NCBI GenBank assembly: GCA_002269645.1 | Contig: NIVC01000006.1 | Coordinates: forward strand, 434,001-498,000 | Length of the DNA stretch: 64,000 nt | Direction of reading: 5' to 3' | Source: Macrostomum lignano | Lineage: Eukaryota | Part shown: one piece after another, positions 1,304 through 56,760 of the stretch | How positions within the stretch are numbered: position 1 is the stretch's first letter | How the letters are laid out: each line of letters begins with the position of its first letter | The notes under the pieces: generated by a model | What the model was told of the DNA's origin: nothing | What the model saw: the letters and a program-made list of their open reading frames with translations, nothing else | Database searches by the model: none | Program-made: the position numbers and the translations under genes

Positions 1304-2177
1304 TAGCACATTTTGAAGAAAATTTGAAAAAAATTCTCCTCGAAATCCAAATTTACATTCTAAACGGATTTCGCAAAAACTCTGTAAAGATTACAAGCGT
1401 ATTTGGTGGAAAAAATTGTCTAGAATAACAAACAACAACAAAGAACTCCTCCCACCAATCACACAAAGTGTCCACAAGGGGGAGGAATCAGATGGCACGC
1501 CCATGGGCCAGGTTCCTCAAAAAGTCTCTAGAAAGAATGCACTACGAGCTAAGGAGACAGGAACAGTGGCATTTTGCCTGCTTGTCGGTCTTTGGTATGG
1601 CATTTCAAGAAAAAACGGCTTGATAAACTTTTGAGTCTAAATGTGAGATATTTGAGGAATTTAGAAGATGCTAAAGAACTAAAAACTAGTCCTAGTTTTT
1701 GTCCTAATGGTCTTAGGGTTCTTAGGGCTCTTCGGGTGAAAGAATCCAATTTAAAAAGGATTAGGCCACCCTCTCATCGGACTGAGAGCTTGAGAACAGT
1801 TTGAGATGTGTTTTCTTCCTAGGATGAGGAAGGTAATTTTACCAATAATCATCAGTGCTACATCATCGTTTCATTTTCTTAGCTGTTCACAAGTAAGGAC
1901 ATGCAATGTGAAAGGACTACTTTTGTAATATGCAAATTGCTTTTATTGTTACGCTTGCAAACATACTACTTTCACTAGTCTATTGCTGCATGTTAGGCCA
2001 GAAATTATAAGCTTAAACTTTTCATGAAGAGTCAGGGTGTAAGAGAATGATTTCGATTTATTTCTTTTTTTACCAACTGACTTAGAGTATTCGCTGTATC
2101 GCTGGTGCATGCATTTAGTAAGCTCTGGCCATAGACGACTTCAGTCGTGAAATTCAGACTCTCAGTCACCGGCCGCA

Positions 2178-2940
2178 TGGGAATCACCCAGCTGGTCACT
2201 GGATCAATTTGAATCGCCCAGTTGGTCACTGAATCAATGAGAATCGCCCAGTTGGTCACTGAATCAATAGGAATCGCCCAGTTGGTCACTGAATCAATTT
2301 GAATCGCCCAGTTGGTCACTGAATCAATGGGGATCGCCCAGTTGGTCACTGAATCAATAGGAATCGCCCAGTTGGTCACTGAATCAATGGGAATCGCCCA
2401 GTTGGTCACTAAATCAATAGGAATCGCCCAGTTGGTCACTGAATCAATGGGAATCGCCCAGTTGGTCACTGAATCAATGGGAATCGCCCAGTTGGTCACT
2501 GAATCAATGGGAATCGCCCAGTTGGTCACTGAATCAATGGGAATCGCCCAGTTGGTCACTGAATCAATGGGAATCGCCCAGTTGGTCACTGAATCAATGG
2601 GAATCGCCCAGTTGGTCACTGAATCAATGGGAATCGCCCAGTTGGTCACTGAATCAATGGGAATCGCCCAGTTGGTCACTGAATCAATGGGAATCGCCCA
2701 GTTGGTCACTGGATCAATGGGAATCGCCCAGTTGGTCACTGAATCAATGGGAATCGCCCAGTTGGTCACTGAATCAATGGGAATCGCCCAGTTGGTCACT
2801 GAATCAATGGGAATCGCCCAGTTGGTCACTGAATCAATGGGAATCGCCCAGTTGGTCACTGGATCAATGGGAATCGCTAAGGTGGTCACTGAAATGATGG
2901 GAATCGCCCAGTTGTTCACTGGATTAATGTGAATCGCCCA
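2178..2940. repeat. 30-bp minisatellite (GAATCGCCCAGTTGGTCACTGAATCAATGG), about 25 copies
   Basis: Direct tandem periodicity of 30 nt; near-identical central copies and diverged edge copies. Confidence 0.98.
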
Positions 2941-6700: not shown

Positions 6701-6907
6701 TCGTCGCTAAGAGTGTATGATTAATCGACGTATGATCGACATATGATTCATGATTTATGGTCTTTGTAGGTCTTGCAGACCAATTTTCCTAAACTAAAGT
6801 TACCCTGTATGCAGAATCAAACCCACGGTACTTTGGTGCAAGTCCGTACCCCATGTAGGCCATGTAGGCCATTACCCCATGTAGGCCATGCTGAGTACCG
6901 GTTGAGG

Positions 6908-7357
6908 CTGGGGTCGAACATATCGGTATAGGGCAGGGGTCGAACATATCGGTATAGGGCAGGGGTCGAACATATCGGTATAGGGCAGGGGTCGAACATA
7001 TCGGTATAGGGCAGGGGTCGAACATATCGGTATAGGGCAGGGGTCGAACATATCGGTATAGGGCAGGGGTCGAACATATCGGTATAGGGCAGGGGTCGAA
7101 CATATCGGTATAGGGCAGGGGTCGAACATATCGGTATAGTGTAGGGGTCGAACATATCGGTATAGGGCAGGGGTCGAACATATCGGTATAGGGCAGGGGT
7201 CGAACATATCGGTATAGTGTAGGGGTCGAACATATCGGTATAGGGCAGGGGTCGAACATATCGGTATAGGGCAGGGGTCGAACATATCGGTATAGTGTAG
7301 GGGTCGAACATATCGGTATAGGGCAGGGGTCGAACATATCGGCATAGGGCAGGGGTC
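6908..7357. repeat. 26-bp minisatellite (GGGTCGAACATATCGGTATAGGGCAG), about 17 copies, in GPCR intron 1
   Basis: Period 26 (CGAACA at 6915, 6941, ...); variant unit with TAGTGTAG recurs. Confidence 0.98.
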
Positions 7358-7614
7358 AGCAAACGATCCGGCTCGTGGGCCACATTCGACGCGCAAAGCC
7401 TCTTTATCCAGCCCTCGGGTCCTTTGAAACTTCACAATAGCAATCCGGCCTACTCAAGGTTTGTGTCTCCTTTCACGCACTTCTCACCTCTCCCTTTCCA
7501 CTTCCCTTCTGTCTTCTCCTATTTCATCCCTTCTCTCGTCTCGTCTCCAATCTTTTTTCCTCACCTCTCCTCTCTTCCCCTTCTCTGGCCTGCAGTCATG
7601 CGAAGCTAAAAAGC

Positions 7615-7684
7615 GGAGAGCAACGACCTGCGCCCCCCCCCGAGGTGCCCTCTGGAGGACCGAAAGGCCCACGAAATGCAGGTC
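7615..7684 (+). ncRNA. HDV-like (nested double pseudoknot) self-cleaving ribozyme candidate
   Basis: P1 GGAGAGC(7615-21)/GCCCTCT(7647-53) with G1-U wobble and one A-C mismatch; P2 GACCTGC(7625-31)/GCAGGTC(7678-84) perfect; P3 GCC(7632-34)/GGT(7644-46); C-rich L3 ending CGA; GG(7654-55) for P1.1; P4 GGACC-GAAA-GGCCC; J4/2 A-C7672-GAAAT. Confidence 0.75.
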
Positions 7685-7767
7685 AGCAACGGGCCTTTCC
7701 CGAGGCCCACACCGCGACGCAGTCTCTTCGCCGCCCAATTGGCATCTGGCGGCCACCTGCCGATTAA

Positions 7768-10700
7768 ATGACTAGCCGACGCCTGAACCAGCCCGCCGAG
7801 CCTCAACGGCGGGCCCCCGGCGGCGCGAGGCGCCCCCGACCCAGCGGCCCGTGCGCGCGCGGCCCCCCAGTAGCCTGCACCTCCTGCAACTCAACGCAGA
7901 GGGCGTCGCCTCCAAGATGCCCGAATTGTGCAAGCTGCTGCTGGATCTGCGCATCGACGTGGCGTGCCTGCAAGAGACCCACACCACCGAGGGTCGGGAT
8001 CCGCGCCTGCCGGGGTTCAACGCGATCTGGCGCCACCGACAGAGCGGCCGGCGCTCCGGCGGCCCCACGCGCGGAGGAGGCGCTGCAATCGTCATCCGCG
8101 AGGGGCTGCGCTTCGAGGTGCTCCAGGAGCGCCCCTGCGCCCCCGATGACGTCACCACGGAGTGGGCCGGCGTCCGGGTTTTCCCCTCTGAAAAGAGCGT
8201 CGAGAGCCTGGACATCCACTGCCTCTACATCCCGCCGATCAGAACGGCTGAAGGCGACGACCGCGTGCAGCGCTTCAGCCCCCGGCACCTCCCGTCCGGC
8301 GTCAACACGGTGATCCTGGGCGACCTGAACGCGCACCATCCAGCCTGGGACCCCGAATCGGAAGAGTCGGACCTGGGCACGGCGGTCTTCGAGTGGTCCG
8401 TGGTGTCCGGCATGCGCGTCCTGAACGACGGCAGCGCCACCCACATGCCGCGCCGCGCCAACACCCGGCAGACGGCGCCTGACGTCAGCCTGTGCCACAA
8501 GTCGCTCGCCAACCGGGCCGAGTGGCAGGTCCGGGGAGACGTCGGCTCGGACCACCTGCCGATCTGCATCACCATCCACAGCCGAGGCGCGGCCAAGCGC
8601 GGGGGCGCCGCCCGGCGGTCCTGGGCGAAGGCGGACTGGGCCAGTTTCCGCGCCCGGACCGAGGAAGCCCTGGCTGGCTGGGAGGCCTGCCCGCCCGAGT
8701 CGGTCAGCGAGGCCAACCAGCAGCTGACCACGGCCATCCAGGAAGCCGACAAGGCGTCTGTCCCTCGCGGGGCGCGGCCCTCCGCCAAGGCCTGGTGGAC
8801 GCCAGAGGTCGACGACGCCGTGAAGGCTCGCCGCGCCGCGTGGGCCGCCGCCGCCGCCGACCCGAGCGTGCGGCCTGCCTGGAATCGAGCCTGTGCCGAC
8901 GCCAAGAAGACGATCGCCGACGCCAAACGCGAGAGCTGGAGGACCTTCGCCGGCGAGGTGGCAGCTGACAGCGACCACTCCAAGATCTGGAGAATTGTCC
9001 GCTCCCTCGACGGCAGAAACAGCAACCTGCAGCGGGACGCAGCGCTCCGGGTGGGCCAAAAGACGCTCGTCCAGTCGAAGGACATCGCCGAGGCCTACGC
9101 CCGTGAGTATGCCTCCGTCAGCCGCCTCCCGCAAGACCGCAGGACGCGAGACCTCCGCCGCGAGAACTTCCGCAGCAGCGTTTCGCGAGCCGGCGCCGAC
9201 AGCCATGGGAGCAGAGACTTTGGAAAGCCGTTCTCGCACCGCGAGCTGGACAGGGCTCTCCACTCCCTCCCGGCCAGGAAGGCCCCAGGACCCGATGAGA
9301 TCTGCGCTGAACATCTGCAGCACCTCGGTGCCGCTGGACGCCGGGCGGTCCTGCAGCTGATCAACGCGTCCTGGACCCAGGGGGAGGTCCCCGCGGCGTG
9401 GCGCCGTGCCCACATCGTGCCGATCCTCAAGAAGGGCAAGCCGGCCGACGAGATCGGCTCATACCGGCCGATTGCCCTTACCTCCACTCTGGCCAAGCTG
9501 GCCGAGCGTCTGGTTCAAGCGCGGCTCTACTGGTGGGCCGAGTCCCGGCACCTGCTGCACCCCGCCCAAGCCGGCTTCCGCAAGCGGCGCAGCACCGAGG
9601 ACCAGATTGCCCGGCTCACCCAGCTCATCAGCGACGGCCACCAGGCGGCCCCCGCCAGGCGGACGGTCGTCGTCCTGTTCGACTTCCGGCGGGCGTACGA
9701 CACCGTCTGGAAGCAGGGCCTGCTGCACAAGCTGCACAACGCCGGCATCCCAGCGGCCGGGGTCCGCTGGGTCAGCAGCTTCCTGGCCGATCGCCGCGCT
9801 GCCGTCAGGGTGGACGGCGCGCTGAGCAGCTGGCGGCTCTTCCGCGAGGGCCTGCCACAGGGGAGTGTCCTTGCCCCTCTGCTCTTTGCGCTGTACATCA
9901 ACGACCTGCCTGACCACCTGCCGTCCGACTGCACGCCGTTCCTCTACGCCGACGACCTGGCCATCGCAGTGCAAGGCCTGACCGTGGAAGAGGCCGAGAC
10001 GAAGGCGCAGGCTGCGATCGACGCGGTCTCCGACTGGGCGAACGAGTGGCGGATGGAGCTGGCGCCGAACAAGTGCGCCGCTTTCCTGTTCACCACCACC
10101 GCCGGAGAGGCCAGCCGTGAGCTGCGTCTGCGGCTGAACGACGCCCCGCTCTCGACGGACCGCCAGCCGCGCTTCCTCGGCGTCATCCTGGACCGGCTGC
10201 TCAGCTTCACGGCGCACGCCGCCAACGTCGCCGGCCGCGCCCGCGCCCGCTGCGGCGTTCTGGCGGCGCTGTCTGGCAGCAACTGGGGCGCCAAGCAGAG
10301 CGACGTGCGCCAGCTCTACACGGCATATGTGCGGCCGGTGCTGGAGTACGCTGCCGGCGCCTGGATGCCGACGGCCTGCAGGACAGCTATCGACCACCTG
10401 GACCGGGCCCAGCGCCTGGGCGCGCGCATCATCACCGGGTGTCCACGGAACACCAGGTCGGAGGTGCTGGAGCGCGAGGCTGGATTGCCGCCGATGGCAG
10501 TCCGCGCGGAGATGCACGCTGGCCTCCTCCACGAGCGCGCCCTCCGGCTGCCGCATGACAACCCGCTGCGCGCCTGCGCGGCCAGCGTCGGCCCGCGCCG
10601 CCGCCTCCAAAGCGCCCGTGGCTGGCGCGAGACGGCGGCCAGTGTATGCAGCGCTGCGGGCCTGAGCGGCTTCCCGCGAGAGCCCGTCCACGCTATCCCG

Positions 10701-11683
10701 ACGACACCTCCCTGGGCTGTTCTGGACTCTGTCACCCTCGGGCTGCAGTTGGCCTCCCCAACCTCGCGGGGGACCTGCCGGAGGCCCGGAGAGCCGCGGC
10801 GCAGCAGACACTTGCCGCCCTGCCGCCCGCCAGCACCGTGATCTGGACCGACGGAGCGGCGAAGGACGGCATCCTGGACGGCGGCAGTGGCGTCCTGGTC
10901 GAGCCCAACACGACGCTGTGCGTCGCTGCTGGCCATGTGACGTCCAGCTTCCACGCCGAGTTAGTGGCCATCGCTGAGGCCCTTCGGTGGGTGCTCGCGG
11001 CCCCGGACCCGGCAGAGCTGTCGCCGGTCCGCATCTGCTCCGACTCCCTGAGCGCGCTTAGCGCGCTCGCGTCCGGCCCCGGGTCGACGGGCGCCACCAT
11101 GATCGACGCCGTCTGGGGCAGCCTCGCCGACCTCGCGGCCCGGGGAACCTCGGTCCACCTGCAGTGGGTGCCTGGCCACGCGGGAATCCCAGGCAACGAG
11201 GCCGTGGACGAGATCGCCAAGCAAGGCACCACGCTGGCGCAAGGCACCGCGCCCGTACCGCTAGCTGCCGCGCAGGCTGCCGTCCGCCGCTACTGCCTCG
11301 CCCGCTGGCACCAGATCTACAACGCGGCGGCCACCGAGGCGGCGAGCACGAGCTCGCTTGCCTGGCACCTTGCCTGCACGGCGGGCCGCCTGCCGCCTCA
11401 GCCGACAAGCGACCTCACGCGGCGGCAGGAGCGGCTGATCTGCCAGCTGCGCGCCGACCGCTGCCCGGCCCTGCGGGGCTTCCAGGCCGCCATCGGCGTT
11501 GACGTGGCCCCCACCTGCCGCCTCTGTGGCGATGGAGAGGAGACGGCGGCCCATCTGCTGATCTCCTGCCCCGCCCTGACATCACACCGCTGCCGCCTCT
11601 GGGGGCCAAGCCCGGAGCCCGCGGCAGTTTTCGAGAACTGCGTCGCGGTGTTGAACTTCCTCGGGAAGGCGGGCGCCATCTGA
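7768..11683 (+). CDS. Retrotransposon polyprotein APE endonuclease + reverse transcriptase + RNase H + C-terminal CxxC-H-C finger; two -1 frameshifts as assembled
   Basis: APE: LQLNAEG, DVACLQETH, ILGDLNAHH, GSDHLPI. RT: KAPGPD, SYRPIALTS, FDFRRAYDTV, GLPQGSVLAP, LYADDL, FLGVILD. RNase H: WTDGAA, AELVAI, SDSLSAL, WVPGHAGIPGNEAVD. Finger: CRLCGDGEETAAHLLISC. One extra base in a homopolymer upstream of the APE (e.g. C6 at 7863-68) and in G5 (10768-72) would fuse ATG 7768 through stop 11683. Confidence 0.9.
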
Positions 11684-12780
11684 CGCCCGGTGCCATGGGC
11701 CCTGGCCCGAGCACGCCCGAAGAAGAAGAAGAAGAAGAAGAAGAAGAAGCTAAAAAGCTGCATAGCCTTCGTGGCTCCTTCAGCCAGCACATACTTTCTC
11801 AAGTATACTCATATCTCAAAGTGTACTCATGTACATGTACACTTTCGCAGGTATAATTGCTCATTCCTGCTACCTGCTACTTTACGCTCGTAGTAACATC
11901 AAGACATTAGCTCGCACTGCTGTGATATCAGTAGATTAACTTTCCTCAGTGTATTTGTTTTTTGTCAAAAAAATGCACAGGCTTGTGCAGAGGGGCTGGT
12001 TAAGGGTTAGGATAGGACGACCTCGAATTCAATCAGTTTCTCTCTTTGCTTTCAATTGCCCAGCCTGCTCAGTCTGTTTCGAACGCTGAGCAGGGCAGGA
12101 CCGTTTTAGACAAAGTTCTTTGAATGTGAAGCGCTTACAGGCTGCCCCAGTCGCTGGAACTGGAATGGCATGACTGTAGGCTCAATGGGAAGCATCTTGC
12201 TATTCCTCTTGGCAATTGCGTGCAGCCTGACTGACTCTCGCTGCCAGAGAACAACTTGAGCCGCCATAAATTTGATGTCTGTTAGTCTCTCAGTCTGCTT
12301 AGGCTGATCTTCCAGCCCTTCAAGCTCTTCGAAAGCGGTGGTCGAGCATTTCCCGACGGATATATGGGCCAGACTGCCACATATGCTAAGCAAAACTGCT
12401 TGATATTTGTTTGTATAGTTTTCACAAAAAAGTCTTTAATTCTTTGTTGATTGACCTTTTTTTGCGCTAGCTAGTCACAATGTTTTATGGCCGCTAGATC
12501 ATAAAAACAACCAACGAAGAAGCCAATGCATTGCATTAAATTACAAGTAGAGATTACAAGTTTTTATATAGGTCAGAAGAGGAACTACCATATCTGATTT
12601 TGGTTTGGTACGGTCTAGCGCAGCAATAATCTGTTAGCGTCACTGCGGTGTACCGATGTAATTTAGACTTTTTTGTCCTTTGAAAGTGGGTGCATGCAGT
12701 CACTGCTCATACAAGGACAACTTAAGTAGAAGGACGCAACACTCGAAATCTGTGGTAAATGTTTTGAAGGCAACTTCTTG

Positions 12781-15883: not shown

Positions 15884-17398
15884 CCTGCGGTGCCAAAATG
15901 AGTGCCTGTGGCGCTAAAATGAGCGCCTGTGGCGCTAAAATGAGTGCCTGCGGCGCCAAATGAGTGCCTGCGGCGCCAAAATGAGTGCCTGTGGCGCTAA
16001 TGAGTGCCTGCGGCGCTAAAAGGAATGCCTGCGGCGCCAAAATGAGTGCCTGTGGGGATAAAGTGAGTGCCTGCGGCGCTAAAAGGAGTGCCTGCGGCGC
16101 TAAAATGAGTGCCTGCGGCGCCAAAATGAGTGCCTGCGGCGCTAAAATGAGTGCCTGCGGCGCTAAAAGGATTGCCTGCGGCGCCAAAATGAGTGCCTGC
16201 GGCGCCAAAATGAGTGCCTGTGGCGCTAAAATGAGTGCCTGCGGCGCCAAAATGAGTGCCTGCGGCGCTAAAATGAGTGCCTGCGGCGCTAAAAGGAATA
16301 CCTGCGGTGCCAAAATGAGTGCCTGCGGCGCTAAACTGAGTGCCTGCGGCGCTAAAAGGATTGCCTGCGGCGCCAAAATGAGTGCCTGCGGCGCCAAAAT
16401 GAGTGCCTGCGGCGCTAAAATGAGTGCCTGCGGCGCTAAAAGGATTGCCTGCGGCGCCAAAATGAGTGCCTGCGGCGCCAAAATGAGTGCCTGTGGCGCT
16501 AAAATGAGTGCCTGCGGCGCCAAAATGAGTGCCTGCGGCGCTAAAATGAGTGCCTGCGGCGCTAAAAGGAATACCTGCGGTGCCAAAATGAGTGCCTGCG
16601 GCGCTAAAATGAGTGCCTGCGGCGCTAAAAGGATTGCCTGCGGCGCCAAAATGAGTGCCTGCGGCGCCAAAATGAGTGCCTGTGGCGCTAATGAGCGCCT
16701 GCGGCGCTAAAAGGAATACCTGCGGTGCCAAAATGAGTGCCTGCGGCGCTAAAATGAGTGCCTGCGGCGCTAAAATGAGTGCCTGCGGGGCTAAAAGGAA
16801 TACATGCGGCGCCAAAATGAGTGCCTGCTGCGCCAAAATGAGTGCCTGTGGCGCTAAAATGAGTGCCTGTGGCGCTAAAATGAATGCCTGTGGCGCTAAA
16901 AGGAATACCTGCGGCGCCAAAATGAGTGCCTGCGGCGCTAAAATGAGTGCCTGCGGCGCTAAAAGGAATACCTGCGGTGCCAAAATGAGTGCCTGCGGCG
17001 CTAAAATGAGTGCCTGCGGCGCTAAAATGAGTGCCTGCGGCGCTAAAAGGAATACCTGCGGTGCCAAAATGAGTGCCTGCGGCGCTAAAATGAGTGCCTG
17101 CGGCGCTAAAATGAGTGCCTGCGGCGCTAAAATGAGTGCCTGCGGCGCTAAAATGAGTGCCTGCGGCGCTAAAATGAGTGCCTGCGGCGCCAAAATGAGT
17201 GCCTGCTGCGCCAAAATGAGTGCCTGTGGCGCTAAAATGAGTGCCTGTGGCGCTAAAATGAATGCCTGTGGCGCTAAAAGGAATACCTGCGGCGCCAAAA
17301 TGAGTGCCTGCGGCGCTAAAATGAGTACCTGCGGGGCTAAAAGGAATACATGCGGCGCCAAAATGAGTGCCTGCGGCGCCAAAATGAGTGCCTGCGGA
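15884..17398. repeat. 21-bp minisatellite (TGAGTGCCTGCGGCGCYAAAA), about 72 copies, with higher-order repeats
   Basis: Period 21; variant units AAAAGGAATACC and AAAAGGATTGCC recur at 273-bp spacing, and a GCCTGCTG variant at 378-bp spacing. Confidence 0.98.
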
Positions 17399-20902: not shown

Positions 20903-21904
<1,002 letters not shown>

Positions 21905-23050: not shown

Positions 23051-24490
23051 GTCTTGGTGAGCGCCCCTGTATCTTGGGTGGGCGACCCTGTCTCTTGGGT
23101 GGGCGACCCTGTCTCTTGGTTGGGCGCCCCCGTCTCATGCTGGGCGCCCCTGTCTCTTTGTGGGCGCCCCTGTCTCTTGGGTGGGCGCCCCTGTCTTTTG
23201 TGTGGGCGCCCCTGTCTCTTGGTGGGCGCTCCTGTATCTTGGGTGGGTGACCCTGTTTCTTGGTGGGCGCCCCTGTCTCTTGCTGGGCGCCCCTGTCTCT
23301 TTGTGGGCGCCCCTGTCTCTAAGGGTGGGCGCCCCTGTTTCTTGGTGGGCGCCCCTGTCTCTTGGTGGGCGCCCCTGTCTCTTTGTGGGCGCCCCTGTCT
23401 CTTGGGTGGGCGCCCCTGTCTTTTGTGTGGGCGCCCCTGTCTCTTGGTGGGCGCTCCTGTATCTTGGGTGGGTGACCCTGTCTCTTGGTGGGCGCTCCTG
23501 TCTGATGGTGGGCGCCCCTGTCTCTTGGTGGGCACCCCTGTCTCTTTGTGGGCGCCCCTGTCTCTTGGTGGGCGACGCTGTCTCTTGGGTGGGCGCCCCT
23601 GTCTCTTGGGTGGGCGCCCCTGTCTTTTGTGTGGGCGCCCCTGTCTCTTTGTGGGCGCCCCTGTCTCTTGGGTGGGCGCCCCTGTTTCTTGGTGGGCGCC
23701 CCTGTCTCTTGGTGGGCGCCTCTGTCTCTTGGGTGGGCGCCCCTGTCTCTTGGGTGGGCGCCCCTGTCTCTTGGTGGGCGCCCCTGTCTCTTGGTGGGCG
23801 CCCCTGTCTCTTTGTGGGCGCCCCTGTCTCTTGGGTGGGCGCCCCTGTCTTTTGTGTGGGCGCCCCTGTCTCTTGGTGGGCGCTCCTGTATCTTGGGTGG
23901 GTGACCCTGTCTCTTGGTGGGCGCTCCTGTCTCTTGCTGGGCGCCCCTGTCTCTTTGTGGGCACCCCTGTCTCTTTGTGGGCGCCCCTGTCTCTTGGTGG
24001 GCGACGCTGTCTCTTGGGTGGGCGCCCCTGTCTAATGCTGGGCGCCCCTGTCTCTTTGTGGGCGCCCCTGTCTCTTGGGTGGGCGCCCCTGTTTCTTGGT
24101 GGGTGCCCCTGTCTCTTGGTGGGCGCCCCTGTCTCTTTGTGGGCGCCCCTGTCTCTAAGGGTGGGCGCCCCTGTTTCTTGGTGGGCGCCCCTGTCTCTTG
24201 GTGGGCGCCTCTGTCTCTTGGGTGGGCGCCCCTGTCTCTTGGGTGGGCGCCCCTGTCTCTTGGTGGGCGCCCCTGTCTCTTGGTGGGCGCCCCTGTCTCT
24301 TGGGTGGGCGCCCCTGTCTCTTGGGTGGGCGCCCCTGTCTTTTGTGTGGGCGCCCCTGTCTCTTGGTGGGCGCTCCTGTCTCTTGGTGGGCGCCCCTGTC
24401 TCTTGGTGGGCGCCCCTGTCTCTTGGTGGGCGCCCCTGTCTCTTGGTGGGGGCCCCTGTCTCATGGTGGGCGTCCCTGTCTCTTGGGCCC
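23051..24490. repeat. 20/21-bp GC-rich minisatellite (GGTGGGCGCCCCTGTCTCTT), about 70 copies
   Basis: Tandem units with a GGCGCC core; the same family occurs in reverse orientation at 54790-55334. Confidence 0.98.
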
Positions 24491-25345: not shown

Positions 25346-25842
25346 GATAGATCACTCAGGTAGATAGACGGATAGAAGCAGTGCAGGCCCATTTCACTAC
25401 TTCCGCACTGCAATGCAAGCCGGTTTGCTCACGCAGGTATGCAGAGTGAGCAAGTCGAGAAAGGAAAAAACAGTGGAAATTCATCTCCCCAGGTAAATAT
25501 TTCCCAAATCTCGACCTGCCCCCGCTGCGGGGGCCGGCCAAAGTAAATGGAAATTTTTCCTATTCTTGGCCAGCCCCTATGCGCATTTGTCTCAGTGAAG
25601 CTGCAAATCGCTGCAGACACCTGCCGTTAATTAATCCTTCTTTTGACTGCCGGCCCTTCTGCAAAAGTCAAATCGATGGCCCTCGCTTTCTTATTCTGTG
25701 TCGTTGTAATCGAGTTTCCGTTTTTTGGGCTGTTGATTATATTTACTGTTGCCAACAGGTCTGTTTATTCACTGTTGGCATTCCATATTTGGTCAAATGA
25801 AAATGGGCTCGAAAACTGCACAGCTCATCTACTGTGCCTCAT

Positions 25843-26581
25843 CAACACCCACAACACCTCAGCAACACCCACAACACCTCAGTAACACCCACAGCACCTC
25901 AGCAACACCCACAACACCTCAGTAACACCCACAACACCTCAGCAACACCCACAACACCTCAACAACACCCACAACACCTCAACAACACCCCAGAGCACCT
26001 CAGAAACACCCACAACACCTCAGCAACACCCACAACACCTCAGCAACACCCACAGCACCCCAACAACACCCCACAGCACCTCAACAACACCCACAACACC
26101 TCAACAACACCTCAACAACACCCCAGAGCACCTCAGAAACACCCACAACACCTCAGCAACACCCACAACACCTCAGCAACACCCACAACACCTCAACAAC
26201 ACCCACAACACCTCAACAACACCCCAGAGCACCTCAGAAACACCCACAACACCTCAGTAACACCCACAACACCTCAGTAACACCCACAACACCTCAGTAA
26301 CACCCACAACACCTCAACAACACCCACAACACCTCAGCAACATCCCACAACACCTCAGCAACATCCCACAACACCTCAGTAACACCCACAACACCTCAGT
26401 AACACCCACAACACCTCAGTAACACCCACAACACCTCAGCAACATCCCACAACACCTCAGCAACATCCCACAACACCTCAGCAACATCCCACAACACCTC
26501 AGCAACATCCCACAACACCTCAGCAACATCCCACAACACCTCAACAACACCCACAGCACCTCAGCAACACCCACAGCACCC
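25843..26581. repeat. 20/21-bp CA-rich minisatellite (CAACACCCACAACACCTCAG)
   Basis: Tandem units; the 21-bp variant AACATCCCAC dominates the right part. Confidence 0.97.
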
Positions 26582-27839: not shown

Positions 27840-30800
27840 CAGCAAGCATCAGCAAGCATCCCCCAGACAGCAAGCATCCCCCAGACAGCAAGCATCCCTC
27901 AGACAGCAAGCATCCCTCAGAAAGCAAGCATCCCTCAGACAGCAAGCATCGCCCAGACAGCAAGCATCCCCCAGACAGCAAGCATCCCCCAGACAGCAAG
28001 CATCCCCCAGACAGCAAGCATCCCTCAGACAGCAAGCATCCCTCAGACAGCAAGCATCCCTCAGACAGCAAGCATCGCCCAGACAGCAAGCATCCCCCAG
28101 AGAGCAAGCACCCCCCAGACAGCAAGCATCCCTCAGACAGCAAGCATCCCTCAGACAGCAAGCATCGCCCAGACAGCAAGCATCCCCCAGAAAGCAAGCA
28201 TCCCCCAGACAGCAAGCATCCCTCAGACAGCAAGAAGCCCATAGCAAGCATCCCCCAGACAGCAAGCAGCCCATAGCAAGCATCCCCCAGATAGCAAGCA
28301 TCCCCCAGACAGCAAGCATCCCTTAGATAGCAAGCATTCCCCAGACAGCAAGCAAGCATCCCCCAGACAGCAAGCAAGCATCCCCCAGACAGCAAGCAGC
28401 CCACAGCAAGCATCCCCCAGATAGCAAGCATCCCCCAGACAGCAAGCATCCCCTAGATAGCAAGCATTCCCCAGATAGCAAGCATCCACCAGATAGGAAG
28501 CATCCCACAGATAGCAAGCATCCCCCAGATAGCAAGCATCCCCCAGATAGCAAGCATCCCCCAGATAGCAAGCATTCCCCAGATAGCAAGCATCCCCCAG
28601 ACAGCAAGCATCCCCCAGATAGCAAGCATCCACCAGATAGCAAGCATCCACCAGATAGCAAGCATCCCCCAGACAGCAAACATCCCTCAGACAGCAAGCA
28701 TCCCTCAGACAGCAAGCATCCCTCAGACAGCAAGCATCCCCCAGACAGCAAGCATCCCTCAGACAGCAAGCATCCCTCAGACAGCAAGCATCCCCCAGAC
28801 AGCAAGCATCCCCCAGACAGCAAGCATCCCTCAGACAGCAAGCATCCACCAGATAGCAAGCATCCACCAGATAGCAAGCATCCACCAGATAGGAAGCATC
28901 CCACAGATAGCAAGCATCCCTTAGATAGCAAGCATTCCCCAGACAGCAAGCAAGCATCCCCCAGACAGCAAGCAGCCCACAGCAAGCATCCCCCAGATAG
29001 CAAGCATCCCCCAGACAGCAAGCATCCCCTAGATAGCAAGCATTCCCCAGATAGCAAGCATCCACCAGATAGGAAGCATCCCACAGATAGCAAGCATCCC
29101 CCAGATAGCAAGCATCCCCCAGATAGCAAGCATCCCCCAGATAGCAAGCATTCCCCAGATAGCAAGCATCCCCCAGACAGCAAGCATCCCCCAGATAGCA
29201 AGCATCCACCAGATAGCAAGCATCCACCAGATAGCAAGCATCCCCCAGACAGCAAACATCCCTCAGACAGCAAGCATCCCTCAGACAGCAAGCATCCCTC
29301 AGACAGCAAGCATCCCCAGACAGCAAGCATCCCTCAGACAGCAAGCATCCCTCAGACAGCAAGCATCCCCAGACAGCAAGCATCCCCCAGACAGCAAGCA
29401 TCCCTCAGACAGCAAGCATCCACCAGATAGCAAGCATCCACCAGATAGCAAGCATCCACCAGATAGGAAGCATCCCACAGATAGCAAGCATCCCTTAGAT
29501 AGCAAGCATTCCCCAGACAGCAAGCAAGCATCCCCCAGACAGCAAGCAGCCCACAGCAAGCATCCCCCAGATAGCAAGCATCCCCCAGACAGCAAGCATC
29601 CACCAGATAGCAAGCATCCACCAGATAGCAAGCATCCACCAGATAGGAAGCATCCCACAGATAGCAAGCATCCCCTAGATAGCAAGCATCCCCCCAGACA
29701 GCAAGCATCCCTCAGACAGCAAGCATCCCCCAGACAGCAAGCATCCCCCAGACAGCAAGCATCCCCAGACAGCAAGCATCCCCCAGACAGCAAGCATCCC
29801 CCAGACAGCAAGCATCCCCAGACAGCAAGCATCCCCAAGACAGCAAGCATCCCCAGACAGCAAGCATCCCCCAGACAGCAAGCATCCCCAGACAGCAAGC
29901 ATCCCCCAGACAGCAAGCATCCCCAAGACAGCAAGCATCCCCCAGACAGCAAGCATCCCCCAGACAGCAAGCATCCCCCAGACAGCAAGCATCCCCCAGA
30001 CAGCAAGCATCCCCAAGACAGCAAGCATCCCCAGACAGCAAGCATCCCCAGACAGCAAGCATCCCCCAGACAGCAAGCATCCCCCAGACAGCAAGCATCC
30101 CCCAGACAGCAAGCATCCCCCAGACAGCAAGCATCCCCCAGACAGCAAGCATCCCCCAGACAGCAAGCATCCCCCAGACAGCAAGCATCCCCCAGACAGC
30201 AAGCATCCCCCAGACAGCAAGCATCCCCAGACAGCAAGCATCCCCCAGACAGCAAGCATCCCCCAGACAGCAAGCATCCCCAGACAGCAAGCATCCCCCA
30301 GACAGCAAGCATCCCCCAGACAGCAAGCATCCCCCAGACAGCAAGCATCCCCAGACAGCAAGCATCCCCAGACAGCAAGCATCCCCCAGACAGCAAGCAT
30401 CCCCCAGACAGCAAGCATCCCCCAGACAGCAAGCATCCCCCAGACAGCAAGCATCCCCCAGACAGCAAGCATCCCCAGACAGCAAGCATCCCCCAGACAG
30501 CAAGCATCCCCCAGACAGCAAGCATCCCCCAGACAGCAAGCATCCCCCAGACAGCAAGCATCCCCCAGACAGCAAGCATCCCCCAGACAGCAAGCATCCC
30601 CCAGACAGCAAGCATCCCCCAGACAGCAAGCATCCCCCAGATAGCAAGCATCCCCCAGACAGCAAGCATCCCCAGACAGCAAGCATCCCCCAGACAGCAA
30701 GCATCCCCCAGACAGCAAGCATCCCCCAGACAGCAAGCATTCCCCAGACAGCAAGCAAGCATCCCCCAGACAGCAAGCAGCCCACAGCAAGCATCCCCCA

Positions 30801-33800
30801 GATAGCAAGCATCCCCCAGACAGCAAGCATCCACCAGATAGCAAGCATCCCCAGATAGCAAGCATCCACCAGATAGCAAGCATCCCACAGATAGCAAGCA
30901 TCCCCCAGATAGCAAGCATCCCCCAGATAGCAAGCATCCCCAGATAGCAAGCATCCCCAGATAGCAAGCATCCCCCAGACAGCAAGCATCCCCCAGATAG
31001 CAAGCATCCCCAGATAGCAAGCATCCCCAGATAGCAAGCATCCCCCAGACAGCAAGCATCCCTCAGACAGCAAGCATCCCCAGACAGCAAGCATCCCCAG
31101 ACAGCAAGCATCCCCAGACAGCAAGCATCCCCAGACAGCAAGCATCCCCCAGACAGCAAGCATCCCCCAGACAGCAAGCATCCCCCAGACAGCAAGCATC
31201 CCCAGACAGCAAGCATCCACCAGATAGCAAGCATCCACCAGATAGCAAGCATCCACCAGATAGGAAGCATCCCACAGATAGCAAGCATCCCTTAGATAGC
31301 AAGCATTCCCCAGACAGCAAGCAAGCATCCCCCAGACAGCAAGCAGCCCACAGCAAGCATCCCCCAGATAGCAAGCATCCCCCAGACAGCAAGCATCCAC
31401 CAGATAGCAAGCATCCACCAGATAGCAAGCATCCACCAGATAGGAAGCATCCCACAGATAGCAAGCATCCCCCAGATAGCAAGCATCCCCCCAGACAGCA
31501 AGCATCCCTCAGACAGCAAGCATCCCCCAGACAGCAAGCATCCCCAGACAGCAAGCATCCCTCAGACAGCAAGCATCCCCCAGACAGCAAGCATCCCCAG
31601 ACAGCAAGCATCCCCAGACAGCAAGCATCCCCAGACAGCAAGCATCCCCAGACAGCAAGCATCCCCCAGACAGCAAGCATCCCCAGACAGCAAGCATCCC
31701 CCAGACAGCAAGCATCCCCAGACAGCAAGCATCCCCAGACAGCAAGCATCCCCAGACAGCAAGCATCCCCCAGACAGCAAGCATCCCCAGACAGCAAGCA
31801 TCCCCAGACAGCAAGCATCCCCCAGACAGCAAGCATCCCCAGACAGCAAGCATCCCCCAGACAGCAAGCATCCCCCAGACAGCAAGCATCCCCAGACAGC
31901 AAGCATCCCCCAGACAGCAAGCATCCCCAGACAGCAAGCATCCCCAGACAGCAAGCATCCCCCAGACAGCAAGCATCCCCCAGACAGCAAGCATCCCCCA
32001 GACAGCAAGCATCCCCAGACAGCAAGCATCCCCAGATAGCAAGCATCCCCAGACAGCAAGCATCCCCCAGACAGCAAGCATCCCCCAGACAGCAAGCATC
32101 CCCAGACAGCAAGCATCCCCAGACAGCAAGCATCCCCCAGACAGCAAGCATCCCCAGACAGCAAGCATCCCCCAGACAGCAAGCATCCCCCAGACAGCAA
32201 GCATCCCCCAGACAGCAAGCATCCCCAGACAGCAAGCATCCCCCAGACAGCAAGCATCCCCCAGACAGCAAGCATCCCCCAGACAGCAAGCATCCCCCAG
32301 ACAGCAAGCATCCCCAGACAGCAAGCATCCCCAGACAGCAAGCATCCCCCAGACAGCAAGCATCCCCCAGACAGCAAGCATCCCCCAGACAGCAAGCATC
32401 CCCAGACAGCAAGCATCCCCAGACAGCAAGCATCCCCCAGACAGCAAGCATCCCCAGACAGCAAGCATCCCCCAGACAGCAAGCATCCCCCAGACAGCAA
32501 GCATCCCCCAGACAGCAAGCATCCCCAGACAGCAAGCATCCCCAGACAGCAAGCATCCCCCAGACAGCAAGCATCCCCCAGACAGCAAGCATCCCCAGAC
32601 AGCAAGCATCCCCAGACAGCAAGCATCCCCCAGACAGCAAGCATCCCCAGACAGCAAGCATCCCCCAGACAGCAAGCATCCCCCAGACAGCAAGCATCCC
32701 CAGACAGCAAGCATCCCCAGACAGCAAGCATCCCCAGATAGCAAGCATCCCCAGACAGCAAGCATCCCCCAGATAGCAAGCATCCCCAGATAGCAAGCAT
32801 CCCCAGATAGCAAGCATCCCCAGACAGCAAGCATCCCCAGACAGCAAGCATCCCCAGACAGCAAGCATCCCCAGACAGCAAGCATCCCCCAGACAGCAAG
32901 CATCCCCAGACAGCAAGCATCCCCAGACAGCAAGCATCCCCAGACAGCAAGCATCCCCCAGACAGCAAGCATCCCCAGACAGCAAGCATCCACCAGATAG
33001 CAAGCATCCACCAGATAGCAAGCATCCCCAGATAGCAAGCATCCCACAGATAGCAAGCATCCCCAGACAGCAAGCATCCCCAGACAGCAAGCAAGCATCC
33101 CCAGACAGCAAGCATCCCACAGCAAGCATCCCCAGATAGCAAGCATCCCCAGACAGCAAGCATCCCCAGATAGCAAGCATCCCCAGATAGCAAGCATCCC
33201 CAGATAGCAAGCATCCCACAGATAGCAAGCATCCCCCAGACAGCAAGCATCCCCAGACAGCAAGCATCCCCAGACAGCAAGCATCCCCAGACAGCAAGCA
33301 TCCCCAGACAGCAAGCATCCCCCAGACAGCAAGCATCCCCAGACAGCAAGCATCCCCAGACAGCAAGCATCCCCAGACAGCAAGCATCCCCAGACAGCAA
33401 GCATCCCCAGACAGCAAGCATCCCCCAGACAGCAAGCATCCCCCAGACAGCAAGCATCCCCAGACAGCAAGCATCCCCAGACAGCAAGCATCCCCAGACA
33501 GCAAGCATCCCCCAGACAGCAAGCATCCCCAGACAGCAAGCATCCCCCAGACAGCAAGCATCCCCAGACAGCAAGCATCCCCCAGACAGCAAGCATCCCC
33601 AGACAGCAAGCATCCCCCAGACAGCAAGCATCCCCAGACAGCAAGCATCCCCAGACAGCAAGCATCCCCAGACAGCAAGCATCCCCCAGACAGCAAGCAT
33701 CCCCAGACAGCAAGCATCCCCCAGACAGCAAGCATCCCCAGACAGCAAGCATCCCCAGACAGCAAGCATCCCCCAGACAGCAAGCATCCCCAGACAGCAA

Positions 33801-36800
33801 GCATCCCCCAGACAGCAAGCATCCCCAGACAGCAAGCATCCCCCAGACAGCAAGCATCCCCAGACAGCAAGCATCCCCAGACAGCAAGCATCCCCCAGAC
33901 AGCAAGCATCCCCAGACAGCAAGCATCCCCAGACAGCAAGCATCCCCAGACAGCAAGCATCCCCAGACAGCAAGCATCCCCAGACAGCAAGCATCCCCAG
34001 ACAGCAAGCATCCCCCAGACAGCAAGCATCCCCCAGACAGCAAGCATCCCCAGACAGCAAGCATCCCCCAGACAGCAAGCATCCCCAGACAGCAAGCATC
34101 CCCAGACAGCAAGCATCCCCCAGACAGCAAGCATCCCCAGACAGCAAGCATCCCCAGACAGCAAGCATCCCCAGACAGCAAGCATCCCCAGACAGCAAGC
34201 ATCCCCAGACAGCAAGCATCCCCAGACAGCAAGCATCCCCAGACAGCAAGCATCCCCAGACAGCAAGCATCCCCAGACAGCAAGCATCCCCAGACAGCAA
34301 GCATCCCCAGACAGCAAGCATCCCCAGACAGCAAGCATCCCCAGACAGCAAGCATCCCCAGACAGCAAGCATCCCCAGACAGCAAGCATCCCCAGACAGC
34401 AAGCATCCCCAGACAGCAAGCATCCCCAGACAGCAAGCATCCCCAGACAGCAAGCATCCCCAGACAGCAAGCATCCCCAGACAGCAAGCATCCCCAGACA
34501 GCAAGCATCCCCAGATAGCAAGCATCCACCAGATAGCAAGCATCCCCAGATAGCAAGCATCCCACAGACAGCAAGCATCCCCAGATAGCAAGCATCCCCA
34601 GACAGCAAGCAAGCATCCCCCAGACAGCAAGCATCCCACAGCAAGCATCCCCAGACAGCAAGCATCCCCAGACAGCAAGCATCCCCAGACAGCAAGCATC
34701 CCCAGACAGCAAGCATCCCCAGACAGCAAGCATCCCCAGATAGCAAGCATCCCCAGACAGCAAGCATCCCCAGACAGCAAGCATCCCCAGACAGCAAGCA
34801 TCCCCAGACAGCAAGCATCCCCAGACAGCAAGCATCCCCAGACAGCAAGCATCCCCAGACAGCAAGCATCCCCAGACAGCAAGCATCCCCAGACAGCAAG
34901 CATCCCCAGACAGCAAGCATCCCCAGACAGCAAGCATCCCCAGACAGCAAGCATCCCCAGACAGCAAGCATCCCCAGACAGCAAGCATCCCCAGACAGCA
35001 AGCATCCCCAGACAGCAAGCATCCCCAGACAGCAAGCATCCCCAGACAGCAAGCATCCCCAGACAGCAAGCATCCCCCAGACAGCAAGCATCCCCAGACA
35101 GCAAGCATCCCCAGACAGCAAGCATCCCCAGACAGCAAGCATCCCCCAGACAGCAAGCATCCCCCAGACAGCAAGCATCCCCAGACAGCAAGCATCCCCA
35201 GACAGCAAGCATCCCCAGACAGCAAGCATCCCCAGACAGCAAGCATCCCCCAGACAGCAAGCATCCCCAGACAGCAAGCATCCCCCAGACAGCAAGCATC
35301 CCCCAGACAGCAAGCATCCCCAGACAGCAAGCATCCCCCAGACAGCAAGCATCCCCAGACAGCAAGCATCCCCAGACAGCAAGCATCCCCAGACAGCAAG
35401 CATCCCCAGACAGCAAGCATCCCCCAGACAGCAAGCATCCCCAGACAGCAAGCATCCCCCAGACAGCAAGCATCCCCCAGACAGCAAGCATCCCCCAGAC
35501 AGCAAGCATCCCCAGACAGCAAGCATCCCCCAGACAGCAAGCATCCCCCAGACAGCAAGCATCCCCCAGACAGCAAGCATCCCCAGACAGCAAGCATCCC
35601 CAGACAGCAAGCATCCCCAGACAGCAAGCATCCCCAGACAGCAAGCATCCCCCAGACAGCAAGCATCCCCCAGACAGCAAGCATCCCCAGACAGCAAGCA
35701 TCCCCCAGACAGCAAGCATCCCCAGACAGCAAGCATCCCCAGACAGCAAGCATCCCCCAGACAGCAAGCATCCCCAGACAGCAAGCATCCCCCAGACAGC
35801 AAGCATCCCCAGACAGCAAGCATCCCCAGACAGCAAGCATCCCCAGACAGCAAGCATCCCCAGACAGCAAGCATCCCCCAGACAGCAAGCATCCCCAGAC
35901 AGCAAGCATCCCCCAGACAGCAAGCATCCCCCAGACAGCAAGCATCCCCAGACAGCAAGCATCCCCAGACAGCAAGCATCCCCAGACAGCAAGCATCCCC
36001 AGACAGCAAGCATCCCCAGACAGCAAGCATCCCCAGACAGCAAGCATCCCCAGATAGCAAGCATCCCCAGACAGCAAGCATCCCCAGACAGCAAGCATCC
36101 CCAGACAGCAAGCATCCCCAGACAGCAAGCATCCCCAGACAGCAAGCATCCCCAGACAGCAAGCATCCCCCAGACAGCAAGCATCCCCAGACAGCAAGCA
36201 TCCCCAGACAGCAAGCATCCCCAGACAGCAAGCATCCCCAGACAGCAAGCATCCCCAGACAGCAAGCATCCCCAGATAGCAAGCATCCCCAGATAGCAAG
36301 CATCCCCAGATAGCAAGCATCCCACAGACAGCAAGCATCCCCAGACAGCAAGCATCCCCAGACAGCAAGCAAGCATCCCCAGACAGCAAGCATCCCAGAC
36401 AGCAAGCATCCCCAGACAGCAAGCATCCCCCAGACAGCAAGCATCCCCAGACAGCAAGCATCCCCAGACAGCAAGCATCCCCAGATAGCAAGCATCCCCA
36501 GACAGCAAGCATCCCCAGATAGCAAGCATCCCCCAGACAGCAAGCATCCCCAGACAGCAAGCATCCCCAGACAGCAAGCATCCCCAGACAGCAAGCATCC
36601 CCAGACAGCAAGCATCCCCAGACAGCAAGCATCCCCAGACAGCAAGCATCCCCAGACAGCAAGCATCCCCAGACAGCAAGCATCCCCAGACAGCAAGCAT
36701 CCCCAGACAGCAAGCATCCCCCAGACAGCAAGCATCCCCAGACAGCAAGCATCCCCAGACAGCAAGCATCCCCAGACAGCAAGCATCCCCAGACAGCAAG

Positions 36801-53480: not shown

Positions 53481-53538
53481 GTAAGCATTATAATTATTGC
53501 ATCTTGCGTGCACTTCAGTGCTTCAGTGCTTCAAATGA

Positions 53539-55928: not shown

Positions 55929-56760
<832 letters not shown>

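What the first reader, a model, noticed from the sequence alone, without database searches (positions are those of the whole stretch)
7615..7684. HDV-like self-cleaving ribozyme starting exactly at the 5' end of the retrotransposon
Seen: all HDV-fold elements in the right order, namely P1 with a G1-U wobble, a perfect 7-bp P2, a 3-bp P3, a C-rich L3 with CG, GG for P1.1, P4 capped by GAAA, and a C (7672) followed by GAA in J4/2. G1 is the first base after the TSD. Established: HDV-like ribozymes define the 5' ends of R2, L1Tc/Ingi and some RTE elements. Inference: this copy is full length rather than truncated, and releases its RNA from read-through transcripts. Caveats: A-C mismatches in P1 and P4, a C9 run that makes L3 two nt too long (or shifts the P2/P3 register), and a J4/2 two nt longer than canonical, so this copy may be slow or dead.
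Basis: partly seen in the sequence, partly recalled or inferred. Interest (0 to 1): 0.85.

Follow-up and report, generated by a model that had tools for sequence, protein, structure and literature searches.

The report
HDV-like ribozyme heading a flatworm retrotransposon
The first 70 bases of this jumping gene, probably from the flatworm Macrostomum lignano, match a self-cutting RNA (HDV-like ribozyme) that nine related jumping genes also carry at their very start, a known trick found here in a new lineage, though this copy looks slightly damaged.

Summary
Confirmed and supported.

The element (7615-11749) is a 70% GC non-LTR retrotransposon. It has one APE-RT-RNase H ORF and a (GAA)n tail. 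Its protein is 93% identical to a Macrostomum lignano protein.

Nine related elements (24-40% protein identity; barnacle-like and marine metagenome contigs) carry the same fold in their 5' UTRs. P3 (GCC/GGU), the L3 G and a C-A/G-A-A J4/2 are conserved; P1, P2, P1.1 and P4 vary by compensatory changes. In six of them homology starts exactly at G1.

A descriptor built only from the relatives gave no false hit in 566 kb. Relaxing its L3 rule alone added one hit, window 7615-7684.

This copy deviates in three ways: L3 is 9 nt, starts with C and lies in a C9 run; P1 and P4 each have an A-C mismatch; the ORF has two frameshifts, one mapped to a G5 run. It may be weak, dead or mis-assembled.

Rfam and two covariance models built here were uninformative. 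Cleavage is untested.

Verdict: a new member of a known kind, of moderate interest.

The parts
7602..7614 (+). 5' copy of the target-site duplication, GAAGCTAAAAAGC
   Evidence: Identical 13-mer at 11746-11758. Its first 4 nt overlap the (GAA)n tail, so the true TSD is 9-13 bp.
7615..7684 (+). HDV-like ribozyme candidate (whole fold); predicted cleavage is 5' of G7615
   Evidence: Found by the generic descriptor and by the family descriptor. Shuffle controls. Same architecture as nine relatives.
7615..7621 (+). P1 5' strand, GGAGAGC
   Evidence: Pairs with 7647-7653: 6 of 7 pairs, G1-U wobble, A7619xC7649 mismatch.
7625..7631 (+). P2 5' strand, GACCUGC (J1/2 = AAC, 7622-7624)
   Evidence: Perfect 7 bp with 7678-7684. 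An 8th pair, G7632-U7677, appears in the MFE fold.
7632..7634 (+). P3 5' strand, GCC
   Evidence: Pairs with GGU 7644-7646. GCC/GGU is identical in 8 of 9 relatives; L006 has ACC.
7635..7643 (+). L3, CCCCCCCGA. It holds the conserved G7642 and the C's that pair with G7654-G7655 (P1.1).
   Evidence: The relatives have 7-8 nt beginning with U. Here it is 9 nt beginning with C, inside a C9 run. This is the only feature that fails the relatives-only descriptor.
7644..7646 (+). P3 3' strand, GGU
7647..7653 (+). P1 3' strand, GCCCUCU
7654..7655 (+). P1.1 3' strand, GG
   Evidence: Pairs with CC in L3. In the relatives this pair covaries: CC/GG, AU/AU, UC/GU.
7657..7670 (+). P4 hairpin, GGACC-GAAA-GGCCC
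   Evidence: 4 pairs plus an A7659xC7668 mismatch. Present in the MFE fold.
7672..7677 (+). J4/2, CGAAAU, with the putative catalytic C7672
   Evidence: Identical J4/2 in relatives L052 and L053. The others have CAAAC, CAAAU, CAACC or CAAAGC.
7678..7684 (+). P2 3' strand, GCAGGUC
7685..7767 (+). Remainder of the 5' UTR
   Evidence: Lies between the ribozyme and the ATG. No sequence similarity to the relatives' UTRs.
7768..11683 (+). Single ORF with two frameshifts. Domains: APE about 7860-8555, RT 9426-10190, RNase H 10832-11230, zinc-finger-like motif 11489-11575.
   Evidence: Pfam. tblastn of relatives shows a frame change at 10757-10778, in the G5 run 10767-10771. ATG 7768 sits in a TAAATGA context shared with relatives but is out of frame with the APE domain.
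11719..11749 (+). (GAA)n 3' tail
   Evidence: Five relatives (L052, L053, L055, L056, L057) end in (CAA)n.
11746..11758 (+). 3' copy of the target-site duplication

Best explanation
Bases 7615-7684 are the 5'-terminal HDV-like (double-pseudoknot) self-cleaving ribozyme module of a non-LTR retrotransposon lineage. The lineage has one APE-RT-RNase H ORF and a trinucleotide-repeat tail.

Proposed mechanism:
1. The element is transcribed as part of a longer upstream-initiated transcript.
2. The first 70 nt fold co-transcriptionally: P1 and P1.1 stack on P4, and P2 stacks on P3.
3. C7672 in J4/2, together with a Mg2+ ion held by L3, catalyses attack of the 2'-OH of the upstream base (C7614) on the phosphate 5' of G7615.
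4. This leaves element RNA that begins with a 5'-OH G1.
5. Target-primed reverse transcription to the end of that RNA makes new copies that begin exactly at G1, next to the TSD.

What is shown: the fold, its conservation and covariation in relatives, and the coincidence of G1 with the element boundary.

What is inferred from R2, L1Tc and other HDV-like ribozymes: catalysis, read-through transcription and any role in cap-independent translation.

This particular copy is probably weakened or inactive, or its C-run is mis-sized in the assembly. Its L3 is 1-2 nt too long and lacks the leading U, P1 and P4 each have an A-C mismatch, and the ORF has two frameshifts.
For: - Fold at the exact 5' end after a 13-nt TSD.
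- The relatives-only descriptor hit 9 of 9 relatives' 5' UTRs and nothing else in 566,578 nt. Relaxing L3 alone added exactly one hit, window 7615-7684.
- Shuffles: 0 of 50,000 anchored hits, and 21 hits in 8.26 Mb of shuffled element sequence.
- Sequence-based MAFFT alignment of four relatives: 76 of 76 cells paired, 4 of 7 P2 pairs with changes on both sides, and 34-59% paired when the partners are slid. RNAalifold independently recovers P2 and P4.
- L019 versus L021 (74% identical): P1.1 changes from CC/GG to AU/AU, and P2 and P4 show compensatory changes.
- Homology among L002, L057, L052 and L053 is 21% upstream of G1 and 83% downstream. L019 and L021 homology also starts at G1.
- L052 has a 9-nt TSD ending 5 nt before G1.
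Against: - No cleavage assay.
- No Rfam HDV-family hit, even at E<=10. Rfam also misses all four relatives tested, so this says little.
- Covariance models built from relatives score the window copy only 11.8-12.7 bits, E about 2 over the whole window, rank 3-4.
- The nested MFE is unremarkable, z = -0.67.
- L3 lies outside the range of the relatives, P1 alone is weak at -3.9 kcal/mol, and there are two frameshifts.
- No other Macrostomum copies could be retrieved.
- The cross-family structural alignment was found by searching for pairing, so its pair counts are partly circular.
Confidence: 0.78

Rival explanations
1. The copy as assembled is a fully active ribozyme. The C9 run simply lets P3 slide (C7635-C7636 with G7645-G7644), giving a 7-nt L3 with a 2-3 nt bulge between P2 and P3, and the A-C mismatches are tolerated.
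For: L006 already has a 1-nt bulge between P2 and P3, and L055, L056 and L019 carry single mismatches in P1 or P2. In R2, about a quarter of ribozymes have P1 mismatches, and the active jewel-wasp ribozyme has unusual L3 spacing (PMC3774820).
Against: All nine relatives start L3 with U and have 7-8 nt. A 2-3 nt bulge would interrupt P2/P3 stacking. P1 with its internal mismatch is weak. The ORF of the same copy is broken twice.
Confidence: 0.3
2. The conserved 5' structure serves another purpose, such as an internal promoter, an IRES-like element or a binding site for the element's protein, and does not self-cleave.
For: Pr77 of L1Tc is both a promoter and a ribozyme. The R2 5' pseudoknot binds R2 protein and is proposed to act as an IRES (PMC3383444, PMC6765202).
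Against: These roles are add-ons to cleavage in the known cases. The features conserved here are the catalytic ones: the C in J4/2, the G in L3, P1.1, and P1 starting at the element boundary. A boundary exactly at G1 in independent insertions is what cleavage predicts.
Confidence: 0.08
3. The fold is a chance resemblance in a GC-rich 5' UTR.
For: A loose generic HDV descriptor hits about 53 times in the 128 kb of both strands, mostly in GC-rich DNA. The MFE z-score is -0.67. The covariance-model scores are at noise level.
Against: The family descriptor gave zero false positives in 566 kb and 0 of 50,000 anchored shuffle hits. Unpaired motifs that the first generic search did not demand are shared with relatives: GCC...GGU, GG-A after P1', and CGAAAU.
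Confidence: 0.03

Closest known systems
[quoted passage not shown]
   Same: A dispersed, TSD-flanked LINE with a single ORF encoding APE, RT and RNase H. The ribozyme occupies the very first ~70-77 nt, so cleavage defines the RNA 5' end (PMC3185411, PMC4035085, PMC6765202).
   Different: No sequence similarity was detected. L1Tc proteins were not among the homologues found. The tail here is (GAA)n/(CAA)n. Promoter activity like that of Pr77 is untested here.
R2 (and R4) retrotransposon HDV-like ribozymes
   Same: A 5'-terminal double-pseudoknot ribozyme with a conserved P3/L3/P1.1 core, while P1, P2 and P4 vary by compensatory change. P1 is 6-7 bp with occasional mismatches, and P4 is highly variable (PMC3774820).
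   Different: R2 is site-specific in 28S rDNA, uses a restriction-like endonuclease, and often forms P1 with upstream rRNA sequence. Here the element has an APE endonuclease, inserts at dispersed sites with TSDs, and P1 lies wholly within the element.
HDV-like ribozymes of Baggins (LOA clade) and RTE elements (Ruminski et al. 2011, cited in PMC3774820 and PMC8501958; paper not held)
   Same: APE-type LINEs whose 5' termini are processed by HDV-like ribozymes. A role in translation initiation of uncapped RNA has been proposed.
   Different: The clade of the present element was not resolved, and it is not known whether it belongs to either clade. Rfam models of insect HDV-like ribozymes do not match it.
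Twister-variant ribozymes at the 5' end of Perere-3 LINEs in the flatworm Schistosoma mansoni
   Same: The same job (5' processing of an APE-type LINE with TSDs) in the same phylum (PMC8501958).
   Different: A different ribozyme class. There, P1 is regenerated from the TSD; here the whole fold lies inside the element.

Membership tests
HDV-like (double-pseudoknot) self-cleaving ribozymes | Helix order P1-P2-P3-L3-P3'-P1'-P1.1-P4-J4/2-P2', giving a nested double pseudoknot | tested here: met
   Descriptor hits at 7615-7684; helix table.
HDV-like (double-pseudoknot) self-cleaving ribozymes | P1 of 6-7 bp beginning at the cleavage-site nucleotide (usually a G1-U wobble) | tested here: met
   7 positions, 6 paired, G7615-U7653 wobble, one internal A-C mismatch. 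R2 ribozymes tolerate P1 mismatches.
HDV-like (double-pseudoknot) self-cleaving ribozymes | 3-bp P3 closing a short L3 that carries a conserved G and two bases forming P1.1 | tested here: inconclusive
   P3 (GCC/GGU), G7642 and CC/GG for P1.1 are present. However, L3 is 9 nt and starts with C, against 7-8 nt starting with U in all nine relatives.
HDV-like (double-pseudoknot) self-cleaving ribozymes | Catalytic C in J4/2, a few bases before P2' | tested here: met
   C7672-GAAAU, identical to L052 and L053. Its function is not testable here.
HDV-like (double-pseudoknot) self-cleaving ribozymes | Helices supported by covariation among homologues | tested here: met
   Met for the relatives. A6: 100% paired, 4 compensatory P2 pairs, slide controls 34-59%. 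P1.1, P2 and P4 changes between L019 and L021. No other Macrostomum copies were available.
HDV-like (double-pseudoknot) self-cleaving ribozymes | Match to a curated covariance model (Rfam HDV-like families) | tested here: not met
   No hit at gathering score or at E<=10. The same search misses the four relatives tested (L002, L006, L019, L021), so the models are too narrow to decide.
HDV-like (double-pseudoknot) self-cleaving ribozymes | Mg2+-dependent site-specific self-scission, abolished by mutating the catalytic C | not testable with these tools
   Needs an in vitro transcription and cleavage assay.
Ribozyme-terminated non-LTR retrotransposons (R2, L1Tc, Baggins, RTE type) | The ribozyme's cleavage site coincides with the 5' end of full-length copies | tested here: met
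   The TSD abuts G7615. Homology among relatives starts at G1. In L052 the TSD ends 5 nt before G1.
Ribozyme-terminated non-LTR retrotransposons (R2, L1Tc, Baggins, RTE type) | The element encodes a non-LTR RT with an endonuclease | tested here: met
   Pfam Exo_endo_phos, RVT_1 and RNase_H.
Ribozyme-terminated non-LTR retrotransposons (R2, L1Tc, Baggins, RTE type) | Element RNA carries a 5'-OH at G1 and derives from read-through transcripts | not testable with these tools
   Needs 5'-OH-specific RACE or RNA-seq from the animal.

The most novel reading that the evidence does not exclude
These ten sequences define an undescribed, phylum-spanning family of HDV-like ribozymes (flatworm, barnacle-like and marine metagenomic hosts) that no Rfam model detects. 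The family heads a LINE lineage with (NAA)n tails.

In this lineage the ribozyme lies upstream of a conserved 'stops in several frames plus TAAATGA' start context. This suggests that the 5'-OH, uncapped RNA is translated by a ribozyme-assisted, cap-independent route.

The Macrostomum variant, with an L3 embedded in a C9 run, might show that L3 length is more tolerant than assumed.
Probability: 0.2. Interest if true: 0.55.

Novelty: new member of a known kind. Interest (0 to 1): 0.42.

Why it matters
- It extends the ribozyme-terminated LINE strategy to another retrotransposon lineage, and to a free-living flatworm. In another flatworm, Schistosoma mansoni, Perere-3 LINEs use twister variants for the same job.
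- It gives a sequence-level marker, G1 of the ribozyme, for telling full-length copies from 5'-truncated ones in a very repeat-rich genome.
- It supplies ten seed sequences for a covariance model that current Rfam families lack.
- It offers natural variants (L3 length, P1.1 AU/AU, an extra hairpin between P4 and J4/2) for studying how tolerant the HDV fold is.

Tried and rejected
- **Rfam, whole window at gathering score, and 7500-7800 at E<=10:** nothing relevant. Rfam also misses four relatives with clean folds, so the negative result is uninformative.
- **Generic HDV descriptor:** finds the fold but is too permissive, with about 53 hits in 128 kb. It was replaced by a family descriptor.
- **A very loose family scan:** produced thousands of hits and was discarded.
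- **Covariance models R1 (3 relatives) and R2 (8 relatives), nested P2+P3 only:** the window copy has the right boundaries but scores 11.8 and 12.7 bits, E 1.7 and 2.3, rank 3 and 4. The E-value is 0.011 only when the search is limited to 401 nt. R1 also misses L006. A nested model cannot hold P1 and P2 together, and P4 length varies from 16 to 79 nt.
- **Thermodynamics:** MFE -21.7 kcal/mol, z = -0.67. It contains P2 and P4 but is not exceptional.
- **Other copies of the element in the window:** none.
- **Other Macrostomum copies:** P0001 is not on record.
- **Primary-sequence similarity of 5' UTRs across subfamilies:** none.
- **Loci without a ribozyme:** no ribozyme was found upstream of the barnacle genome copy L001, in L003-L005, in the 5'-truncated L054, or in the other 43 metagenome loci. 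These copies may be truncated or may use other 5' ends.
- **Clade of the element** (I, LOA, ingi, Nimb, etc.): could not be resolved. Source names such as 'jockey', 'BS' and 'R1' are automatic labels.

Full report
**1. Observation**

- P1 is GGAGAGC (7615-7621) with GCCCUCU (7647-7653). It has a G1-U wobble and one A7619xC7649 mismatch.
- J1/2 is AAC.
- P2 is GACCUGC (7625-7631) with GCAGGUC (7678-7684), a perfect 7 bp.
- P3 is GCC (7632-7634) with GGU (7644-7646).
- L3 is CCCCCCCGA (7635-7643).
- P1.1 is GG (7654-7655).
- P4 is GGACC-GAAA-GGCCC (7657-7670), with an A-C mismatch.
- J4/2 is C7672-GAAAU.

My own HDV descriptor recovers exactly this parse. G7615 follows a 13-nt target-site duplication, GAAGCTAAAAAGC, at 7602-7614 and 11746-11758.

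**2. The element**

The element spans 7615-11749, is about 70% GC and sits in a 45-52% GC context.
- It encodes Exo_endo_phos (APE), RVT_1 and RNase_H domains, plus a weak zf-RVT motif.
- It ends in (GAA)n.
- The best protein match is 93% identical, to a Macrostomum lignano protein. The next matches are 39% identical, from the barnacle Amphibalanus amphitrite and from metagenome contigs.
- Relatives have one continuous ORF. Here the frame changes at 10757-10778, inside a G5 run.
- The ATG at 7768 is out of frame with the APE domain that follows. That ATG lies in a TAAATGA context shared with relatives.
- The copy is therefore broken, or the assembly has homopolymer indels.

**3. Chance**

- A loose generic descriptor is not specific: it gives about 53 hits in 128 kb.
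- The nested MFE is unremarkable at -21.7 kcal/mol, z = -0.67, although it does contain P2 and P4.
- The specific test is the family descriptor described in section 4.
- In 50,000 dinucleotide shuffles of 7615-7800 it never hit position 1, and hit anywhere once.
- In 1,000 shuffles of the whole element (8.26 Mb, both strands) it hit 21 times, about 2.5e-6 per base.

**4. Relatives**

Loci were fetched through the encoded proteins. Nine of them carry the same fold on the coding strand upstream of the ORF:

| Locus | Coordinates |
|---|---|
| L002 | 186-301 |
| L057 | 89-201 |
| L052 | 1114-1229 |
| L053 | 903-1011 |
| L056 | 94-189 |
| L055 | 682-748 |
| L006 | 251-378 |
| L019 | 121-197 |
| L021 | 9-95 |

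Shared architecture:
- P1 of 6-7 bp
- J1/2 of 2-4 nt
- P2 of 6-7 bp
- P3 GCC/GGU (ACC in L006)
- L3 of 7-8 nt, beginning with U and with a G at the sixth position
- P1.1
- a variable P4
- J4/2 of CAAAC, CAAAU, CGAAAU, CAACC or CAAAGC

Features that were not demanded by the first, generic search turned out to be shared with the window: GCC/GGU, the C-rich L3, 'GG A' after P1', and CGAAAU.

Covariation:
- In the hand-made structural alignment of the first five sequences found (the window, L002, L006, L019, L021), 88 of 91 cells pair and 14 of 19 pairs change on both sides. This alignment was selected for pairing, so these counts are partly circular.
- A purely sequence-based MAFFT alignment of the four closest relatives gives 76 of 76 cells paired. 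Four of seven P2 pairs are compensatory, and only 34-59% pair when the partners are slid.
- RNAalifold on that alignment finds P2, P4 and a second hairpin without my input.
- L019 and L021 are 74% identical. Between them P1.1 differs as CC/GG versus AU/AU, and P2 and P4 show compensatory changes.

Leave-one-out test:
- A descriptor written only from the nine relatives hit those nine and nothing else in 566,578 nt.
- The window fails only its L3 rule.
- Relaxing L3 alone (up to 9 nt, any first base) added exactly one hit, 7615-7684.

**5. Boundary**

- Anchored at G1, the four close relatives are 21% identical over the 40 nt upstream and 83% identical over the 40 nt downstream.
- L019 and L021 homology also starts at G1.
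- L052 has a 9-nt TSD whose 5' copy ends 5 nt before G1.
- This is what cleavage at G1 followed by full-length reverse transcription predicts.

**6. How this copy deviates**

- L3 is 9 nt rather than 7-8, and begins with C where all nine relatives have U.
- The extra bases lie in a C9 run, so P3 could slide, leaving a bulge between P2 and P3.
- P1 has an internal A-C mismatch; P1 alone is worth -3.9 kcal/mol. P4 has another A-C mismatch.
- The mapped frameshift lies in a G5 run. The C9 length may therefore be an assembly error or a slippage mutation (inference).
- The 6-nt J4/2 is not a defect, because L052 and L053 have the same one.
- In R2, P1 mismatches occur in about a quarter of ribozymes. 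One active ribozyme has atypical L3 spacing, and one inactive ribozyme lacks the conserved L3 G (PMC3774820). Here the G is present.

**7. Negative or inconclusive tests**

- Rfam gives no HDV-family match for the window, but none either for the four relatives tested (L002, L006, L019, L021).
- Covariance models from relatives, holding only the nested P2+P3 pairs, place the window copy at the correct coordinates. The scores are 11.8-12.7 bits, E about 2 for the whole window, and E = 0.011 within 401 nt.
- No second copy is present in the window, and no other Macrostomum locus could be retrieved.

**8. Mechanism (inferred from R2, L1Tc and HDV-like ribozymes)**

1. Read-through transcription runs into the element.
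2. The double pseudoknot folds co-transcriptionally.
3. C7672 and an L3-bound Mg2+ catalyse cleavage 5' of G7615.
4. The 5'-OH RNA is translated, possibly with help from the ribozyme.
5. The RNA is copied by target-primed reverse transcription. This is primed where the (GAA)n tail meets a GAAG-containing target, and produces the TSD.

**9. Comparison and novelty**

- HDV-like ribozymes at LINE 5' ends are established for R2/R4, L1Tc/ingi, Baggins and RTE (PMC3774820, PMC3185411, PMC4035085, PMC6765202, PMC8256844).
- In the flatworm Schistosoma mansoni, LINEs use twister variants instead (PMC8501958).
- A full-text search found no paper combining HDV-like ribozymes, flatworms and retrotransposons.
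- I rate this a new member of a known kind, in a lineage and phylum not previously reported in the library searched.
- Interest is moderate. Its main value is for TE annotation and as a seed for a new RNA family.

I did not compare letters with the hepatitis delta virus ribozymes themselves (see referred steps).

Noticed in passing
window 27850-43461: A 15.6-kb array of about 897 copies of the 17-mer CAGCAAGCATCCCCAGA (95% matches), with strong strand asymmetry (GC skew -0.41, AT skew +0.69).
   Followed up: partly
window 2177-2940, 6906-7357, 15884-17397, 20904-21904, 23052-24486, 25837-26580, 50383-51107, 51673-52964, 53535-54386, 54791-55334, 55951-56761, 62032-62410, 63229-63718: The window is packed with micro- and minisatellite arrays (periods 2-82 nt). 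The 20-mer at 23052-24486 and the one at 54791-55334 are reverse complements of each other. The retrotransposon sits just downstream of a 26-mer array and a polypyrimidine stretch (7460-7590).
   Followed up: no
window 10767-10771 and 7768-7870: The mapped frameshift in the ORF lies in a G5 run; one G fewer restores the relatives' reading frame. The other, unmapped, frameshift lies in a stretch with C5-C6 runs. This suggests homopolymer indels from the assembly or from slippage, and bears on how far the C9 run in L3 can be trusted.
   Followed up: partly
window 7764-7775; L002 495-503; L056 about 343-352; L055 about 904-913: The start codon lies in a conserved TAAATGA-like context, with stop codons in several frames packed around it (window: TAA-ATG-A-C-TAG). 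This resembles a reset before the main ORF and could matter for translating an uncapped RNA.
   Followed up: no
L002 157-185 vs 495-523; L006 219-250: Just upstream of G1, L002 has a 29-nt near-copy of its own ORF start, and L006 has a 21-nt tandem duplicate that includes the first 15 nt of the ribozyme. These may be template-switch products at the 5' junction.
   Followed up: no
L002 220-290, L057, L052, L053 (between P4 and J4/2): The four closest relatives carry a second, covarying hairpin between P4 and J4/2. This placement is unusual for an HDV-like fold. The window copy lacks it.
   Followed up: partly
3' ends of L052, L053, L055, L056, L057 vs window 11719-11749: These relatives end in (CAA)n a few bases after the stop codon. 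The window element ends in (GAA)n. The lineage therefore has trinucleotide-repeat tails rather than poly(A).
   Followed up: partly
protein P0055: A 690-aa protein 60% identical to the barnacle-type LINE protein is named in NCBI as coming from a cyanobacterial MAG. This is probably a eukaryotic contig mis-binned into a bacterial genome.
   Followed up: no
window 7619 and 7659: Both helix defects are A-C mismatches that a single G-to-A change on the coding strand would explain, for example P4 GGGCC changed to GGACC. This is consistent with decay by transitions after insertion. Speculative.
   Followed up: no
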